IMG/VR virus record: IMGVR_UViG_3300043418_000072
Location: 290,099 to 354,098 of that record
Strand: one strand, 5' to 3'
DNA length: 64,000 bases
Shown: positions 8,479 through 13,364 of the stretch, piece by piece
Numbering within the stretch: the stretch's first letter is position 1
Layout: each line of letters starts with the position of its first letter
Made by a program: the position numbers and the translations under genes
The notes under the pieces: generated by a model
What the model was told of the DNA's origin: nothing
What the model saw: only the letters and a program-made list of their open reading frames with translations
Databases searched by the model: none

Positions 8479-8658
8479 TGCTGTTAAGGCTGATATCTAA
8501 TAAACCCTACTAGGAATCGAACCTAGGCCCCCGACGGATTATGCCGGTGTGCGTCCACTACACTATAGAGACTCCCTCCTCTTTCGCTCGGCAAAGCTAC
8601 ACGAATTGAGGTTAGATTTCAGACTGCTTTCAGATTGCCGTCATCAGCCTTAACAACA
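8479..8658 (-). ncRNA. Long-stem RNA enclosing a CCA-less tRNA-like cloverleaf
   Basis: 16-nt terminal inverted repeat; D-like GTG-TAGTGGAC-GCAC; CTAGG-TTCGATT-CCTAG. Confidence 0.55.
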
Positions 8659-9464: not shown

Positions 9465-9493
9465 ATTATAGCACCCATTTCATTAAGTGTCAA
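9465..9493 (-). promoter_or_regulatory. Sigma70-type promoter
   Basis: TTGACA-N17-TATAAT. Confidence 0.85.
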
Positions 9494-9496
9494 ATT

Positions 9497-9573
9497 TGGT
9501 ACCCCTGGCTGGATTCGAACCTGCAACCAAAAGATTTTAAGTCTGTCCGCACTACCAATTAGCGTACAGGGGC
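9497..9573 (-). tRNA. tRNA-Leu(TAA), short variable loop
   Basis: Loop CTTAAAA, A73, CCA. Confidence 0.85.
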
Positions 9574-9576
9574 ATA

Positions 9577-9653
9577 TGGTACCTTCGGGCGGATTCGAAC
9601 CCCCAACCAACAGTTTCTAAAACTATCCGCACTACCAATTAGCGTACGAAGGC
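9577..9653 (-). tRNA. tRNA-Leu(TAG), short variable loop
   Basis: Loop TTTAGAA, A73, CCA. Confidence 0.85.
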
Positions 9654-9661
9654 ATTGTATG

Positions 9662-9918
9662 TGGCTTCGTTAGCAGGACTCGAACCTGCGACCCGGGGCT
9701 TAAATCGCGTATGCTGGGTGCCCCGTGAGTTTCCAAAAGTTACCCTCACATCCCCTCAATGCCTTATCTCACTTTTCACACATTTCAACCTGTCCCGCAC
9801 TTCCCGGGCTCACAGTGTTTGGTTTTAAAGCCTACGCGATTGTTATCTACTTTGTGCTACTAGATGTATTATCTCATCTACTCAATGCTGCTCTACCTTC
9901 TCTCTACTCTATAACGAA
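9662..9918 (-). ncRNA. 257-nt tRNA-like RNA with large insert and probable pseudoknot
   Basis: Acceptor TTCGTTA/TAACGAA, G73, CCA; GCAGG-TTCGAGT-CCTGC; CGGGGC/GCCCCG; AATCGCGTA/TACGCGATT. Confidence 0.65.
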
Positions 9919-9925
9919 ATAAACT

Positions 9926-10002
9926 TGGTACCCCGTGTCTGATTCGAACAGACAGCCAACTCCTTTTGAGAGAATCCGCACTACCAATTAGCGTAACGGG
10001 GC
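9926..10002 (-). tRNA. tRNA-Leu(CAA), short variable loop
   Basis: Loop CTCAAAA, A73, CCA. Confidence 0.85.
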
Positions 10003-10012
10003 ATTTAAATTT

Positions 10013-10088
10013 TGGTGCAACCTCCAGGGATCGAACCTGGTTCAATGGCTCTTCAGACCACCGCTATGACCACATCAGCTAAAGTTGC
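10013..10088 (-). tRNA. tRNA-Phe(GAA)
   Basis: Loop CTGAAGA, CCA. Confidence 0.9.
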
Positions 10089-10091
10089 ATT

Positions 10092-10166
10092 TGGTAGTTC
10101 CTAGTGGTGTCGAACCACCGACCTCTACAATGTCAATGTAGCGTTCTACCGCTGAACTAAGGAACT
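10092..10166 (-). tRNA. tRNA-Val(GAC)
   Basis: Loop TTGACAT, CCA. Confidence 0.93.
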
Positions 10167-10173
10167 ATAAAAC

Positions 10174-10247
10174 TGGCACGGGAACCGGGGCTCGAACCCG
10201 GAACGACAGAGTCAAAGTCTGTTGTGTTACCATTACACCATCCCCGA
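10174..10247 (-). tRNA. tRNA-Gln(TTG)
   Basis: Loop CTTTGAC, G73, CCA. Confidence 0.92.
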
Positions 10248-10255
10248 ACAAAAAT

Positions 10256-10334
10256 TGGACACTGTGGTGTAAGTTGCAGTACACATTACTAACTATTTGC
10301 AAGGCTACACATAGCGGCCCCGCTTAACACAGTG
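10256..10334 (-). tRNA. Atypical tRNA-like RNA, possibly Cys
   Basis: Perfect CACTGTG/CACAGTG, U73, CCA; TTGCAAA segment; non-canonical D and T arms. Confidence 0.45.
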
Positions 10335-10342
10335 ATAAAAAT

Positions 10343-10514
10343 TGGAGTCTAGTGCTGTTGTGACACAGCAACATCCCTTGAGCGAGAGCGTAGGAACTAA
10401 ATCTACGGGTTTAACACCTCTTGGGTTGAACAGTCAGGACAATTACTTTGTAAGCGTACTAAACAGCGCCTGTTCAGAGCGCTCCCTTTGGGTTACTTTC
10501 ATTTCCAACTAGAC
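10343..10514 (-). ncRNA. 172-nt tRNA-like RNA
   Basis: GTCTAGT/ACTAGAC + U + CCA; adjacent GCTGT-GTCACA-ACAGC T-arm analogue. Confidence 0.5.
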
Positions 10515-10519
10515 ATAAT

Positions 10520-10598
10520 TGGCTCCGAGTGTGGGAATCGAACCCACCTAACCACTGATTAACAGTCAGGTCCCTGCACCTTGCTTGGATTTCTCGGA
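10520..10598 (-). tRNA. tRNA-Asn(GTT)
   Basis: Loop CTGTTAA, G73, CCA. Confidence 0.9.
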
Positions 10599-10604
10599 AT
10601 AACT

Positions 10605-10680
10605 TGGTGCCCCAGTCCGGAATCGAACCGACTTCTCCTGCTTACAAGACAGGACCTCATCCATTAAAGGTTTCAAGGGC
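10605..10680 (-). tRNA. tRNA-Thr(TGT)
   Basis: Loop CTTGTAA, CCA. Confidence 0.88.
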
Positions 10681-10685
10681 ATATA

Positions 10686-10762
10686 TGGCATACCAGGAGA
10701 GATTCGAACTCCCATCACGCAATTTTGGAGACTGCTGTTCTGCCAATTGGAACTACTGGTAT
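10686..10762 (-). tRNA. tRNA-Trp(CCA) with U11-A24
   Basis: ATACCAG TA GTTC CAATTGGCA GAAC A GCAGT CTCCAAA ATTGC; G73, CCA. Confidence 0.93.
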
Positions 10763-10769
10763 ATAAACT

Positions 10770-10853
10770 TGGTGGATACTGTAGGAATCGAACCTACTCA
10801 CTTTACGAACTGGGTTACAGCCAGCCACACCTCTCCAACTGTGTCGAGTATCC
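10770..10853 (-). tRNA. tRNA-Tyr(GTA)
   Basis: Loop CTGTAAC, long variable arm, CCA. Confidence 0.93.
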
Positions 10854-10861
10854 ATTAACTT

Positions 10862-10935
10862 TGGTACCTGGTACAAGAATCGAACTTGTGATAAAGGCTT
10901 ATCAAGCCTCCGTTATACCATTTAACTAACCAGGT
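10862..10935 (-). tRNA. tRNA-Ile(GAT)
   Basis: Loop TTGATAA, CCA. Confidence 0.93.
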
Positions 10936-10941
10936 AAAATT

Positions 10942-11030
10942 TGGCGGGGAGATAGTAGAATCGAACTCTAACCACTTTCGCAGTCCATCGGTTTTCAAGA
11001 CCGTGACAGGCCCAGCCTGCATAACTCCCC
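10942..11030 (-). tRNA. tRNA-Ser(TGA)
   Basis: Loop CTTGAAA, long variable arm, G73, CCA. Confidence 0.88.
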
Positions 11031-11035
11031 GTGAT

Positions 11036-11109
11036 TGGTCTGGGTAGCTGGAATCGAACCAGCGCCTCGAGTATCCAAGACTCGTCGACTACCATTATCC
11101 TATACCCAG
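11036..11109 (-). tRNA. tRNA-Pro(TGG)
   Basis: Loop CTTGGAT, CCA. Confidence 0.92.
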
Positions 11110-11116
11110 ATTATTT

Positions 11117-11191
11117 TGGTGGAGGCCGGGGGTATCGAACCCCTCTAGACAATCTACGTGCAAGGCAGATCCGCAGCCCTCTGCTGCCCCC
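11117..11191 (-). tRNA. tRNA-Ala(TGC), reduced D-arm
   Basis: Loop CTTGCAC, G3:U70, A73, CCA. Confidence 0.8.
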
Positions 11192-11200
11192 ATAAAAGGT

Positions 11201-11347
11201 TTTTGAGAGCCCAACTATCCTCCTGGGAGGACTCACTGGATTGTCTCGTATGGACGAGTTTATCAACCACTATAGCAGCCTGGCGTTATCATGTAGTAGA
11301 CACTACACTATGCTATGTGGGACTCAAGTCCTACGTCTATCTCAAAA
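11201..11347 (-). ncRNA. Structured RNA candidate
   Basis: TTTTGAGA/TCTCAAAA ends; GGAC-TTGA-GTCC, CTCGT/ACGAG, TCCTCC/GGAGGA hairpins. Confidence 0.4.
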
Positions 11348-11349
11348 CT

Positions 11350-11424
11350 TGGTGGATGTAGCTAGATTCGAACTAGCGATAGTTACCGTATGAAGGTAGT
11401 GCATTACCACTTTGCTATACATCC
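11350..11424 (-). tRNA. tRNA-Met or Ile2 (CAT)
   Basis: Loop TTCATAC, A73, CCA. Confidence 0.88.
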
Positions 11425-11504: not shown

Positions 11505-11602
11505 GTATTCATAAACAAACTAGTGGGTCGCTGCCAAAAAATATGTTTCAAATATATTCTAGTCTTCTAGTTTGTTTGTGAATACCCTGTATTGCTACAG
11601 GA
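11505..11602 (-). ncRNA. CCTGT hairpin plus 19-bp long-stem RNA candidate
   Basis: gtattcataaacaaactag / ctagtttgtttgtgaatac; same layout as 9187-9292. Confidence 0.45.
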
Positions 11603-11746
11603 TATGTTAGGGTCGATACCCTAACCAGTTATTTGTACTCTGCTGTTACCGCCAGCATTTCATCCAACTGTCCGCCCGTTTAAAGATTATTATAGTGTTC
11701 TTTCAGGTCCTCGTTACCTGGGCATATAGCACTTATCTAACACTGT

Positions 11747-11899
11747 CTATGCGTGAAGTGAAAACTTTTTACGGCTTTCTAGTTCCTTCCTTGCACGTTC
11801 TAACTTTTCTTGAATCAACGTATTACGTTGTTCTGTTGTTAGCGTATGCTCGGCAGTAAACTTTACTTCACGAATTCTTTTATTAAAGTCTACCTTCAA
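11747..11899 (-). CDS. Small 50-aa protein (TTG start; KVDFNKRIREVKFTAEHTLTTEQRNTLIQEKLERARKELESRKKFSLHA)
   Basis: AAGGA RBS directly after the terminator U-tract; below ORF-track cutoff. Confidence 0.55.
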   Translation of the reverse strand: MKVDFNKRIREVKFTAEHTLTTEQRNTLIQEKLERARKELESRKKFSLHA

Positions 11900-11917
11900 A
11901 AATTTCTTCCTTAAAAC

Positions 11918-11947
11918 AAAAAACCCTAGGGTTTTTAATCCTAGGGT
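11918..11947 (-). terminator. Intrinsic terminator of candidate attenuator
   Basis: ACCCTAGG-ATTAAAAAC-CCTAGGGT + TTTTT. Confidence 0.85.
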
Positions 11948-11973
11948 CCTTTAAGTTTGTTAGCTACTACTTG

Positions 11974-12123
11974 TTAAGCGTAACCACTTCCCTCTAAGAA
12001 CCCTAAACTAATCTCCGGTGCGCGATCATTCGTATTCAAACTAAACGACATCCCTGACCAATAGGCCACTGTGCCTAAGGTAGACTGTTGTTGTTTAAGT
12101 GAATGAAGAATGTTTTGCATCAT
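11974..12123 (-). CDS. Candidate leader peptide, 49 aa (MMQNILHSLKQQQSTLGTVAYWSGMSFSLNTNDRAPEISLGFLEGSGYA)
   Basis: ATG 6 nt after the -10 box (leaderless); codons 40-43 complementary to the terminator 5' arm. Confidence 0.65.
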   Translation of the reverse strand: MMQNILHSLKQQQSTLGTVAYWSGMSFSLNTNDRAPEISLGFLEGSGYA

Positions 12124-12129
12124 GTTAGT

Positions 12130-12158
12130 ATTGTATGTTTATTTACCTTTGTTGTCAA
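12130..12158 (-). promoter_or_regulatory. Sigma70-type promoter with nested TAAATA
   Basis: TTGACA-N17-TACAAT; TAAATA at 12145-12140. Confidence 0.85.
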
Positions 12159-12233: not shown

Positions 12234-12262
12234 ATTGTATGACACTTGTCTTTCTGTGTCAA
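12234..12262 (-). promoter_or_regulatory. Sigma70-type promoter
   Basis: TTGACA-N17-TACAAT. Confidence 0.8.
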
Positions 12263-12279
12263 CTACAACTTTTACCATT

Positions 12280-12363
12280 TGGTGCGAGAGACGGGACTCG
12301 AACCCGTAAGCCTTTCGGCGGCAGATTTTAAGTCTGCTGTGTATACCATTCCACCACTCTCGC
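12280..12363 (-). tRNA. tRNA-Leu(TAA), long variable arm
   Basis: Loop CTTAAAA, CCA. Confidence 0.95.
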
Positions 12364-12372
12364 GATACTTCT

Positions 12373-12401
12373 ATTATATATGCTTAACACAAGAGTGTCA
12401 A
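12373..12401 (-). promoter_or_regulatory. Sigma70-type promoter
   Basis: TTGACA-N17-TATAAT. Confidence 0.85.
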
Positions 12402-12411
12402 GCAATTTGTT

Positions 12412-12486
12412 TGGTCCGGCGTGCAGGAATCGAACCCACATTCGCAAGGTAGAAGCTTGCTGTACTATCCATTGTACTAACGCCAG
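12412..12486 (-). tRNA. tRNA-Arg(TCT)
   Basis: Loop CTTCTAC, CCA. Confidence 0.92.
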
Positions 12487-12491
12487 AAATT

Positions 12492-12566
12492 TGGTGCACC
12501 AACTTGGAATTGAACCAAGACTCAACCGATTATGAGTCGGCTGCTTTACCATTAAGCTATTGGTGC
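12492..12566 (-). tRNA. tRNA-Ile2/Met(CAT), Ile2-like
   Basis: CGACTCATAATCG anticodon arm, CCA. Confidence 0.88.
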
Positions 12567-12590
12567 ATAACGAACATTATAACTAATTGA

Positions 12591-13364
12591 TCATTGCGTG
12601 TCAACTGTGTTTAGCGTCTCGTTAAGAAAAATTTTAACTCTGTCCCTTGATACGGCATTTGCATCTGCGTTATACCCATAGGCACATTGTGTTCCCTTCC
12701 AGCACACTGCACTTCCGCTACCATAGCTGTCAAATGCGTGGTGTGTATTTTCGTAATAATTGTACTTAGCATCTTTAAAGTTTTCAGACTGGGCTAATGC
12801 TTTGCAGCGATCTGCCGCTGCCCATTCGTCGCTAAGACCTATATGTATTTGCAGCGGTATTGCTAGTTTGCGTTCAGCAATCGGTTCTCTACAGGTCGGA
12901 TAGTAGGCCACTGCACTTGCAAATACGCCCGAATCGTCTGATGCAATCAGCAACGAAGTTATGCCACCTAAGGAAAACCCGATCACCGACACCTTCCCGT
13001 TGCTCCACGGTTGCTGTTTAACCCACTTGCCAACTGCTATTGCATCTTGTACTGTATTGTAGGAATATGACGAGTTACCCTTAATTGAGCATATATTCGA
13101 CAGTCCGCGGGTGCTAAATGAGTCAATCACTATTGCATTGTACCCTGCATCGTCAATGTATCGTGCCCAGTCATGATAGTGCATGTTTCGCGGGCCGTTG
13201 CATCCATTCAGTAGGAGCACTGTGCCCCGTTTGGCTTTTTCGTTGACTCGCAGAGACAGGCTAGCTTCGTAGTCGGTGTTATCAACCTGCACTGATACCG
13301 CATTGCAATAAGTTGCAAATAAGGCTAGCGAAAGTAATACTAAAGTTTTACGCATTTTGATCAT
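12591..13364 (-). CDS. Dienelactone hydrolase-family alpha/beta hydrolase with signal peptide
   Basis: GFSLGG elbow, D and HAFD triad residues, AVAYYP; hydrophobic N-terminus. Confidence 0.8.
   Translation of the reverse strand: MIKMRKTLVLLSLALFATYCNAVSVQVDNTDYEASLSLRVNEKAKRGTVLLLNGCNGPRNMHYHDWARYIDDAGYNAIVIDSFSTRGLSNICSIKGNSSYSYNTVQDAIAVGKWVKQQPWSNGKVSVIGFSLGGITSLLIASDDSGVFASAVAYYPTCREPIAERKLAIPLQIHIGLSDEWAAADRCKALAQSENFKDAKYNYYENTHHAFDSYGSGSAVCWKGTQCAYGYNADANAVSRDRVKIFLNETLNTVDTQ

What the first reader, a model, noticed from the sequence alone, without database searches (positions are those of the whole stretch)
11918..12158. Leader-peptide attenuator placed in front of the phage tRNA block
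Seen: a TTGACA-17-TACAAT promoter whose predicted +1 is the A of a 49-codon ORF, followed by a strong terminator (ACCCTAGG/CCTAGGGT + U-tract). Codons 40-43 (TAGGGTTCTT, 12005-11996) can form 10 bp with AAGGACCCTA (11951-11942), which overlaps the terminator 5' arm, so the two structures are mutually exclusive. Established: this is the geometry of ribosome-mediated attenuators (trp, his). Inference: stalling in the leader (QQQ, YW, or any tRNA destroyed by host anticodon nucleases) frees the antiterminator and turns on phage tRNAs, acting as a tRNA-depletion sensor. Internal promoters at 9493, 9398 and 7323 limit direct control to about 11.9-9.5 kb. The direction of the logic needs testing.
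Basis: partly seen in the sequence, partly recalled or inferred. Interest (0 to 1): 0.88.

Follow-up and report, generated by a model that had tools for sequence, protein, structure and literature searches.

The report
Translation-sensing attenuator heading phage tRNA arrays
A short translated leader whose 3' end can fold either into a terminator or into a stronger competing hairpin sits in front of the tRNA gene block of this giant phage and over 100 uncultured relatives, so ribosome progress on the leader probably decides whether the phage tRNA genes are transcribed.

Summary
The window holds a near-consensus promoter (12158-12130), a 49-codon ORF starting 7 nt after the -10 box, a hairpin plus U-tract terminator (11950-11913), and a 10-bp pairing of codons 40-43 with the terminator's 5' flank.

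Comparison with relatives shows the pairing is real.
- It is the base of a 64-nt hairpin, H1, with the stop codon at its apex.
- H1 is more stable than the terminator in 86 of 86 relatives and shows compensatory changes. Some alter the amino acid, and the strand occurs in all three codon registers.
- Hits found through the terminator motif alone gave 92 family members. All keep an open 30-74-codon frame ending inside H1, although the peptides differ widely.
- 77 of 80 have tRNA genes within 1.5 kb downstream.

Most likely this is a two-state, ribosome-mediated transcription attenuator. Without a ribosome, H1 forms and transcription reads through. A ribosome on the last 12 codons or so lets the terminator form.

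All evidence is computational. I rate it a new variant of a known mechanism in a new setting.

The parts
12130..12158 (-). Sigma-70-type promoter TTGACA-17-TACAAT. The predicted start site is the A of the ORF1 ATG, giving a leaderless mRNA.
   Evidence: 11/12 match. 86 of 91 relatives have a promoter scoring at least 10/12 within 120 nt of the ATG. In about 29 of them the ATG lies 6-11 nt after the -10 box.
11974..12123 (-). Leader ORF1: 49 codons plus TAA. It is translated, but the peptide sequence is poorly conserved across the wider family.
   Evidence: 241 protein clusters match the family profile. The frame is open in all 92 family members found by terminator motif alone, while the other two frames carry 3.1 and 4.2 stops on average over the 86 analysed. 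There is no Pfam or PHROG hit. The AlphaFold2 model has pLDDT 65: one helix plus a disordered tail.
12057..12081 (-). Hairpin Ha inside ORF1 (UAGGC/GCCUA with outer ACC/GGU). Its 3' strand includes the invariant Trp codon. It is a candidate RNA polymerase pause or synchronising hairpin.
   Evidence: In relatives the inner stem covaries (GUGCA/UGCAC, GGAC/GUCC, GGCU/AGCC) while the encoded amino acids change. The GG of the Trp codon is paired in 72 of 80 members.
11942..12005 (-). Antiterminator hairpin H1. P1 pairs 12005-11996 with 11951-11942. P1b pairs 11994-11992 with 11955-11953. Apical P2 pairs 11986-11976 with 11972-11961. The stop codon (11976-11974) sits at the apex.
   Evidence: Energy -24.5 kcal/mol, z = -4.1, 0 of 200 shuffles as stable. 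The same three-part hairpin appears in 17 of 17 diverse relatives, z -3.3 to -7.0. For P1+P1b, 84.6% of cells are paired, 7 of 13 pairs show double changes, and 33 cells are compensatory against 0 of 500 shuffles. H1 is more stable than the terminator in 86 of 86.
11913..11950 (-). Intrinsic terminator T. The 5' arm is 11947-11940, the loop 11939-11931, the 3' arm 11930-11923, followed by the U-tract. Its 5' arm shares ACCCTA (11947-11942) with the 3' strand of H1.
   Evidence: 96.8% of cells are paired across 26 relatives, with CG/UG/UA variants and a different compensated stem in L011.
11747..11899 (-). ORF2, 50 aa, TTG start. Its Shine-Dalgarno sequence AAGGAAG begins right after the U-tract, leaving no room for a promoter, so it can be expressed only by read-through of T.
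   Evidence: A homologous ORF2 (...F-T-R-x-H-T-L-S-x-E-Q...) starts 16-19 nt after the U-tract in 18 of 26 relatives.
11513..11727 (-). Structured RNA X, about 200-230 nt, of unknown kind. It is the next conserved feature downstream and precedes the first tRNA.
   Evidence: 13 of 14 predicted pairs show compensatory changes. The motif occurs within 700 nt downstream in 59 of 85 family members. Rfam gives no match.
9497..11424 (-). First stretch of the tRNA block (tRNA-Met 11424 to tRNA-Leu 9497, about 16 tRNA genes). No consensus promoter lies between it and T, so its transcription must pass T.
12234..12604 (-). Three further consensus promoters (12604, 12401, 12262) and three tRNA genes (Met, Arg, Leu) upstream. 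Their transcripts also have to cross ORF1 and T.

Best explanation
This is a two-state, ribosome-mediated transcription attenuator at the head of a phage tRNA operon. Host RNA polymerase starts at the consensus promoter and transcribes a roughly 50-codon leader. The last 9 or so codons plus the 3' UTR fold into a strong hairpin, H1, with the stop codon at its apex. The 3' strand of H1 is also the 5' arm of an intrinsic terminator, T. H1 is made first and is more stable. If no ribosome is in the last part of the leader when the terminator's 3' arm emerges, H1 holds and polymerase reads through into ORF2, structured RNA X and the tRNA genes. If a ribosome is translating the last 12 or so codons, or is sitting at the stop codon, H1 is melted but the terminator's 5' arm stays free, because it lies 26-38 nt beyond the stop. 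T then forms and the transcript ends. Read-through therefore reports slow or absent translation of the leader. Shown here by sequence and comparison: the two conserved, covarying, mutually exclusive structures; the conserved ORF and stop position; and the synteny with tRNA arrays. Inferred: that T terminates, that the ribosome is the switch, the direction of the logic, and any physiological trigger.
For: 1. H1 and T both exist and exclude each other in the window.
2. P1 of H1 covaries. In 26 relatives position +1 is U-A in 16, C-G in 8 and U-G in 2, with no mismatch, and this change alters Phe to Ser. In 86 terminator-selected relatives position -4 is A-U in 40 and G-C in 37. Slid-register controls fall to 56% or less.
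3. The P1 5' strand occurs in all three codon registers (45/37/10), and GGG is a rare Gly codon in this phage (7%). The selection is therefore on RNA, not on the peptide.
4. The apical stem keeps its position around the stop codon while its sequence differs (GGUUAC/GUAACU, GUGUA/UACAC, UUAAG/CUUAA).
5. Selecting on the terminator motif alone gave 92 family members. All have an open 30-74-codon frame. Over the 86 with a clear P1, the stop lies mostly 16-24 nt after the P1 5' anchor and 26-38 nt before the P1 3' strand, and always on the 5' strand or in the loop of the apex. The other frames carry 3-4 stops.
6. Peptide sequences diverge widely.
7. H1 is more stable than T in 86 of 86, with medians of -24.6 and -15.1 kcal/mol.
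8. The ribosome-mask partition function gives P(T) near 0 with no ribosome or with the P-site at codon 35 or earlier, and near 1 for codons 37-47, in 4 of 4 sequences tested.
9. 77 of 80 members have same-strand tRNAs within 1.5 kb downstream (mean 5.5), against 14 of 82 upstream (mean 0.44).
10. ORF2 starts directly after the U-tract with no room for a promoter, and about 16 tRNA genes in the window have no other consensus promoter. Read-through of T must therefore occur.
Against: There is no transcript, 3'-end or ribosome data. Termination and its dependence on translation are predicted only.

The covariation counts are not corrected for phylogeny.

With the P-site on the last codon, the nearest-neighbour model lets P1 re-form around the ribosome. 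Excluding that state relies on a steric argument, not a calculation.

Once the inner stems of H1 are allowed to coexist with T, the two global states are close in energy. The full-length minimum-energy fold picks T in 28 of 86, so kinetics decide the outcome and were not simulated.

Within the main clade the peptide (W...DRTPEGY) is conserved more than a pure spacer would need, so it may have a role of its own.

Several relatives have a consensus promoter between X and the first tRNA, so the tRNAs are not always under sole control of the element.

In the window clade ORF1 has no Shine-Dalgarno sequence. Transcripts from the three upstream promoters may therefore never be translated here and may simply read through.
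Confidence: 0.65

Rival explanations
1. ORF1 is an ordinary small phage gene with its own promoter and a leaky terminator. H1 is a 3'-end stabiliser or an RNase III-type processing hairpin that separates the small mRNA from the tRNA precursor. Read-through would then be constitutive, not regulated.
For: The main clade shows clear peptide conservation across 241 clusters. Long imperfect hairpins between phage transcription units are classic RNase III sites (general knowledge). A fixed partial terminator would also explain how ORF2 and the tRNAs are expressed.
Against: H1 sequesters the terminator's 5' arm and is more stable in 86 of 86, so a constitutive T would be blocked by its own upstream hairpin. 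The coding sequence always runs into the 5' half of H1 and stops at its apex, which a stabiliser or processing site does not require. The peptide varies widely in the terminator-selected set, and RNA pairing is kept at the cost of amino-acid changes. AlphaFold2 gives no confident fold.
Confidence: 0.15
2. The H1/T switch is real but is set by a trans-acting factor rather than by ribosome position. Candidates are a protein (the ORF1 or ORF2 product, or a host factor), a tRNA in a T-box-like manner, a small RNA or a metabolite.
For: Some internal-loop and apical sequences of H1 are conserved (GGAGGGAAG, AAAC). The element is tied to tRNA genes. The two states are nearly balanced in energy, as in riboswitch expression platforms.
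Against: There is no Rfam match, T-box included. The interior of H1 varies in sequence and length between subgroups, which makes it a poor ligand pocket. The conserved ORF and the stop codon at the apex have no role in this model.
Confidence: 0.1
3. The leader is a nascent-peptide arrest sensor of the TnaC or SecM type. The conserved W...D-R-x-P-E would stall the ribosome at or before the Pro codon in response to a signal, which leaves P1 free and causes read-through.
For: W, D-R-x-P-E and G are invariant in the protein-selected set. In the main clade Trp lies 12 residues before Pro, as in TnaC (from memory). A stall at that Pro would leave the P1 5' strand uncovered in most members.
Against: The W-to-P spacing varies (12-15, and 20 in L011). 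The Trp codon is base-paired in hairpin Ha in 72 of 80 members, so its invariance may be an RNA effect. Many terminator-selected members lack DRTPE altogether. Synonymous sites in this block are also frozen: GAT CGC ACA in 21 of 21.
Confidence: 0.08

Closest known systems
Leader-peptide transcription attenuators of amino-acid operons (trpL, hisL, leuL, thrL, pheL; Rfam RF00513, RF00514, RF00512, RF00506)
   Same: A short translated leader, an antiterminator and an intrinsic terminator that share a strand, and a stop codon placed so that a terminating ribosome removes the antiterminator but leaves the terminator arm free. Ribosome position sets read-through.
   Different: There is no run of cognate regulatory codons. 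There is no region 1 or anti-antiterminator, so the predicted untranslated default is read-through rather than super-attenuation. The genes downstream are tRNA genes, a small ORF and an unknown RNA in a phage, not a biosynthetic operon. About a third of members are leaderless mRNAs. The best Rfam score is 17.6 bits against the His_leader threshold of 49.
Ribosome-mediated attenuators that sense translation inhibition (B. subtilis vmlR, PMC9226507; also bmrB-bmrCD and Listeria lmo0919, from memory)
   Same: The leader reports general ribosome slowing rather than the supply of one amino acid. A stalled or late ribosome favours the antiterminator and switches on a gene that relieves the translation problem.
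   Different: Those are cellular antibiotic-resistance genes in Firmicutes. This element is phage-borne and in front of tRNA genes, and its trigger is unknown.
pyrBI leader (E. coli)
   Same: The outcome depends on how closely the ribosome follows the polymerase.
   Different: In pyrBI a closely coupled ribosome physically blocks the terminator, giving read-through. Here the stop codon keeps the ribosome 26-38 nt short of the terminator arm, so coupling is predicted to favour termination.
T-box riboswitches
   Same: An antiterminator/terminator switch linked to tRNA status.
   Different: A T-box binds uncharged tRNA directly, is not translated and controls aminoacyl-tRNA synthetase and amino-acid genes. 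No T-box features and no Rfam hit are present here.
rnTrpL/peTrpL of Sinorhizobium (PMC6614838)
   Same: A precedent for an attenuator whose terminated RNA and leader peptide have functions of their own. That could explain the extra conservation seen here.
   Different: No evidence for a trans function was obtained here.

Membership tests
Ribosome-mediated (leader-peptide) transcription attenuator | A short ORF with start signals immediately downstream of a promoter and upstream of the regulated genes | tested here: met
   The window has a 49-codon ORF 7 nt after the -10 box. All 92 terminator-selected relatives have an open frame of 30-74 codons, and 86 of 91 have a promoter scoring at least 10/12.
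Ribosome-mediated (leader-peptide) transcription attenuator | Mutually exclusive antiterminator and terminator hairpins that share a strand | tested here: met
   H1 (12005-11942) and T (11950-11913) share 11947-11942. Both are conserved and covary.
Ribosome-mediated (leader-peptide) transcription attenuator | An intrinsic terminator (GC-rich stem plus U-tract) before the downstream genes that actually terminates | not testable with these tools
   The sequence features are present (8-bp stem with 5 G-C pairs, then U6GU4) and conserved. Termination itself needs an experiment.
Ribosome-mediated (leader-peptide) transcription attenuator | A stop codon or stall sites placed so that the ribosome footprint decides which hairpin forms | tested here: met
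   The stop lies at the apex of H1, mostly 16-24 nt after the P1 5' anchor and 26-38 nt before the P1 3' strand in 86 members. The mask model switches between codons 35 and 37.
Amino-acid operon attenuators (trp/his type) | Tandem regulatory codons for the sensed amino acid | tested here: not met
   QQQ occurs only in the window clade. No codon run is conserved.
Amino-acid operon attenuators (trp/his type) | A region 1:2 pause/anti-antiterminator hairpin that shares a strand with the antiterminator | tested here: not met
   85 of 86 members have no upstream complement of 6 nt or more to the P1 5' strand. A conserved hairpin, Ha, exists inside the ORF but does not overlap H1.
Amino-acid operon attenuators (trp/his type) | A match to the curated Rfam leader models | tested here: not met
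   His_leader scores 17.6 bits against a threshold of 49 (E = 2.8). Nothing else is significant.
T-box riboswitch | A specifier loop, the T-box sequence, and an untranslated leader that binds tRNA | tested here: not met
   No Rfam T-box hit in the window or in seven relatives. The leader is an ORF.
Nascent-peptide arrest leaders (TnaC, SecM) | A conserved peptide motif at a fixed distance from the arrest site | tested here: inconclusive
   W...DRxPE is invariant in the protein-selected set. However, the spacing varies, the motif is absent from many terminator-selected members, and its codons are also RNA-constrained.
RiPP or cofactor precursor peptide (PqqA/MftA-like) | A conserved core motif plus an adjacent modifying enzyme such as a radical SAM protein | tested here: not met
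   The E-x3-Y motif is lost in many members. Neighbouring genes differ from locus to locus, and no radical SAM gene is adjacent.

The most novel reading that the evidence does not exclude
The element may be a translation-capacity sensor that closes a feedback loop on tRNA supply. The phage would time host ribosomes on a 50-codon leader. When translation falters, for example through codon-tRNA imbalance late in infection or through host anticodon nucleases and other translation-targeting defences, it would open transcription into its own tRNA array, a small protein and an undescribed structured RNA (X). That would be the first attenuator known to control tRNA genes, and a built-in alarm against tRNA-directed immunity in a large group of uncultured giant phages.
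Probability: 0.35. Interest if true: 0.9.

Novelty: new variant of a known kind. Interest (0 to 1): 0.8.

Why it matters
Many large phages carry tRNA arrays, and these are now linked to codon compensation and to escape from tRNA-cleaving defences. How phages regulate the arrays is essentially unknown.

A conserved leader-peptide attenuator at the 5' edge of the arrays would be a regulatory principle for them. I found no description of one in four literature searches.

It would also add a minimal two-state version of ribosome-mediated attenuation, in which read-through is the default without translation and about a third of members are leaderless mRNAs.

The hypothesis is directly testable with simple reporter constructs. 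The same locus points to a new structured RNA (X) and a small protein (ORF2) that are co-regulated with the tRNAs.

Tried and rejected
- RiPP or cofactor precursor. The idea came from the E-x3-Y motif near the C-terminus and two radical SAM genes in the window. I rejected it because the motif is not conserved, no modifying enzyme is adjacent, and neighbouring genes vary.
- Folded small protein. AlphaFold2 with 92 sequences gave pLDDT 65 and pTM 0.31, a single helix with a disordered tail. There are no Pfam or PHROG hits.
- Known RNA family. Rfam found only tRNAs and sub-threshold noise in the window and in seven relatives.
- Relatives among isolated phages. None were found by megablast, blastn or tblastn against GenBank phages. 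The family is known only from metagenomes.
- Anti-antiterminator (region 1). Absent.
- Codon-bias sensor. ORF1 in the window is not enriched in rare codons (mean relative frequency 0.385 against 0.42 for the phage's genes), and the phage tRNA set covers nearly all amino acids, so no specific codon-tRNA link could be drawn.
- The search for related loci with the 92-sequence protein alignment failed for lack of a conserved stretch, so DNA patterns were used instead.
- The MAFFT alignment A3 is not structure-aware in the H1 interior. P2 was therefore judged from per-sequence folds rather than from column counts.
- No covariance model was built.

Full report
**What the window is.** The window is part of a roughly 354-kb uncultured myophage. 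It is 100% identical to an IMG/VR contig and encodes a large terminase and a 1076-aa tail sheath. It has no relative among GenBank phages by DNA or protein search. A block of 37 tRNA genes lies on the minus strand. The finding sits between tRNA-Leu (12363-12280) and tRNA-Met (11424-11350).

**Checking the observation.**
- The promoter is TTGACA-17-TACAAT at 12158-12130 (11 of 12).
- The ATG's A at 12123 is the 7th base after the -10 box.
- The ORF is 49 codons and ends with TAA at 11976-11974.
- The hairpin is ACCCTAGG/CCTAGGGT followed by U6GU4.
- The 10-bp pairing joins 12005-11996 to 11951-11942 and overlaps the terminator's 5' arm.

In this sequence alone such a duplex turns up in 22 of 3000 codon-shuffled ORFs. 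That is suggestive but not decisive.

**The pairing is the base of a larger hairpin.** RNAfold places it at the foot of a 64-nt hairpin, H1 (12005-11942; -24.5 kcal/mol, z = -4.1). H1 has three stacked helices (P1, P1b, P2), and the stop codon sits at the apex. The minimum-energy fold of the full transcript contains H1, not the terminator.

**Relatives found through the protein.** ORF1 has homologues in IMG/VR and other metagenomes. A profile search returns 241 clusters of roughly 50-aa proteins on contigs of up to 378 kb. I collected 26 distinct loci with DNA.
- All 26 show the same H1 architecture: P1 (GGGUUC-like with GAACCC-like), P1b, and an apical stem around the stop codon.
- H1 energies are -20 to -30 kcal/mol, against -14 to -17 for the terminator.
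- The 17 diverse relatives tested have z-scores from -3.3 to -7.0, and none of 200 shuffles folds as well.

**Covariation in H1.** P1 shows clear compensatory change. GGG-UUC pairs with GAACCC, GGGG-UCC with GGACCCC, GGU-UCC with GGAACC, and (U)AGGGUCC with GGACCCU(A).
- In an anchored alignment, position +1 is U-A in 16 sequences, C-G in 8 and U-G in 2, with no mismatch. This substitution changes Phe to Ser.
- The count of structure pairs on alignment A3 gives 84.6% paired cells for P1+P1b. Seven of 13 pairs have changes on both sides.
- There are 33 compensatory cells, a count reached by 0 of 500 shuffles. Pairing falls to 56%, 36% and 25% when the partner is slid by 1 to 3 columns.
- The apical stem keeps its place but changes sequence: GGUUAC/GUAACU, GUGUA/UACAC, UUAAG/CUUAA, GCUUAA/UUAAGC.

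**The terminator.** It is paired in 96.8% of cells, with U-A, U-G and C-G variants at one position and a differently compensated stem in L011.

**An unbiased sample.** The first set was found through the protein, which could bias it toward intact ORFs.
- Of 99 distinct usable hits, 92 are family members and 7 are unrelated terminators.
- All 92 have an open frame of 30-74 codons, most often 46-48.
- Eighty-six of the 92 have a clear P1 and were analysed further. In these, the stop lies mostly 16-24 nt after the P1 5' anchor and 26-38 nt before the P1 3' strand.
- The stop is always on the 5' strand or in the loop of the apex.
- The other two frames carry 3.1 and 4.2 stops on average over the same span.
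- The peptides in this set are very diverse, and many lack the DRTPE motif.
- The P1 5' strand occurs in all three codon registers (45/37/10).
- P1 position -4 is A-U in 40 and G-C in 37 of 86.
- GGG, the Gly codon used in P1, accounts for only 7% of Gly codons in this phage.

So selection maintains an open, translated frame of set length that ends inside H1. It also maintains the RNA pairings. It does not maintain the C-terminal peptide.

**More RNA structure inside the ORF.** The apparently hypervariable residues in the middle of the peptide form a covarying hairpin, Ha. Examples are GUGCA-GA-UGCAC, GGAC-UAAU-GUCC and GGCU-CAGU-AGCC.
- The outer stem of Ha includes the invariant Trp codon.
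- The GG of that codon is paired in 72 of 80 members.
- Synonymous sites in the conserved blocks are almost frozen.

Much of the peptide conservation is therefore conservation of RNA. AlphaFold2 gives only a low-confidence helix with a disordered tail.

**Context.** The element marks the 5' edge of the tRNA arrays.
- 77 of 80 members have same-strand tRNAs within 1.5 kb downstream. The median distance is 433 nt and the mean is 5.5 genes.
- Only 14 of 82 have tRNAs upstream, with a mean of 0.44.
- 86 of 91 have a near-consensus sigma-70 promoter just upstream. In about a third the ATG lies 6-11 nt after the -10 box, so the leaderless arrangement in the window is a recurrent subclass.
- A conserved small ORF2 follows the U-tract directly in 18 of 26 loci. 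Its Shine-Dalgarno sequence starts 16-19 nt after the U-tract, leaving no room for a promoter.
- Next comes a conserved structured RNA, X, of about 200-230 nt. Thirteen of its 14 predicted pairs show compensatory changes, it has no Rfam match, and its motif is present downstream in 59 of 85 members. The first tRNA follows.
- In the window no consensus promoter lies between T and 9493, so about 16 tRNA genes depend on transcripts that cross T.

Read-through must therefore happen.

**Mechanism.**
- H1 is more stable than T in 86 of 86 members, with medians of -24.6 and -15.1 kcal/mol.
- H1 is also complete before the terminator's 3' arm has been transcribed.
- No upstream segment can sequester the P1 5' strand; 85 of 86 lack any complement of 6 nt or more.

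The predicted default without translation is therefore read-through.

I then computed a partition function with a 27-nt ribosome footprint held unpaired.
- P(terminator) is near 0 with no ribosome or with the P-site at codon 35 or earlier.
- P(terminator) is near 1 with the P-site on codons 37-47. This held for the window and three relatives.
- With the P-site on the last codon, the model lets P1 re-form around the ribosome. I regard that state as sterically implausible, but this is an argument and not a calculation.

The stop codon keeps the ribosome 26-38 nt short of the terminator's 5' arm. The ribosome can melt H1 without masking T.

When the inner stems of H1 are allowed to coexist with T, the two global states are close in energy. 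The full-length minimum-energy fold picks H1 in 57 members and T in 28. That balance is what one expects of a switch, but it also means kinetics decide the outcome, and I did not simulate them.

**Comparison with known systems.** The element works like the leader-peptide attenuators of amino-acid operons, but it lacks two of their defining features.
- There is no run of regulatory codons.
- There is no region 1 hairpin overlapping the antiterminator.
- It matches no Rfam leader model.

In logic it is closer to the attenuators that sense general translation inhibition, such as vmlR (PMC9226507). It is not a T-box. Four full-text literature searches found no description of an attenuator in front of phage tRNA genes.

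**What remains inferred.**
- That T terminates transcription.
- That the ribosome is the switch.
- The direction of the logic.
- The physiological signal. General translation capacity seems more likely than a specific codon, because no codon is universally conserved.
- Whether the main-clade peptide motif W...DRTPEGY has a function of its own.
- The host. Two hints point to freshwater Betaproteobacteria: a family member on a contig binned with a Polynucleobacter MAG, and a betaproteobacterial-type two-piece tmRNA in relative L015.

Noticed in passing
window 11727-11513 (minus strand), extending toward tRNA-Met at 11424; also L010:5315-5518, L013:5306-5512 and others: A conserved structured RNA, X, of about 200-230 nt lies between the attenuator/ORF2 and the first tRNA. 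It has two 5' hairpins with invariant loops (AACGAGG and GCACUUAAAACAU), an invariant AAACGGGCGG, and long-range helices. Thirteen of 14 predicted pairs show compensatory changes. Rfam 15 has no match. Its motif is present downstream of the element in 59 of 85 family members.
   Followed up: partly
window 11899-11747 (minus strand): ORF2 is a conserved protein of 48-59 aa (...E-F-T-R-x-H-T-L-S-x-E-Q-L-K-K-L...). It starts directly after the terminator U-tract in 18 of 26 relatives. It has no Pfam or PHROG hit and its function is unknown.
   Followed up: partly
window 12604-12130 (minus strand): Four consensus or near-consensus sigma-70 promoters (12604, 12401, 12262, 12158) lie within 480 nt, interleaved with three tRNA genes. 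All of them fire toward the same terminator.
   Followed up: no
window 10946-11030 and 10523-10598 (minus strand): Rfam finds two tRNA-like sequences that ARAGORN did not call. One scores 42.9 bits on the tRNA-Sec model and is probably a long-variable-arm tRNA. The other scores 31.7 bits on the tRNA model.
   Followed up: no
window 8501-8573 (minus strand): A tRNA-Ile with the unusual anticodon AAT. Relatives L008 and L017 carry tRNA-Ile(TAT).
   Followed up: no
L015:1584-2000: A related phage contig encodes a permuted (two-piece) tmRNA of betaproteobacterial type (Rfam 122 bits), with a long atypical tag.
   Followed up: no
L227:5670-5930: A complete family member (ORF, H1, T, and the start of RNA X) lies on a 6.2-kb contig binned into a Polynucleobacter MAG. 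This may hint at the host, or it may be a binning artefact.
   Followed up: no
window 12591-13364 (minus strand): A 257-aa dienelactone hydrolase / alpha-beta hydrolase with an N-terminal signal peptide is encoded immediately upstream of the tRNA block.
   Followed up: no
L013:4860-4915, L015:4940-4995 and other relatives: Relatives that have a 5' UTR carry a covarying hairpin at the very 5' end of the leader transcript (ACGCUACA/UGUAGUGU, ACGCUGCA/GGCAGUGU, UGUUAGC/GCUAACA), followed by a conserved GAGAAAACAAA before the ATG.
   Followed up: no
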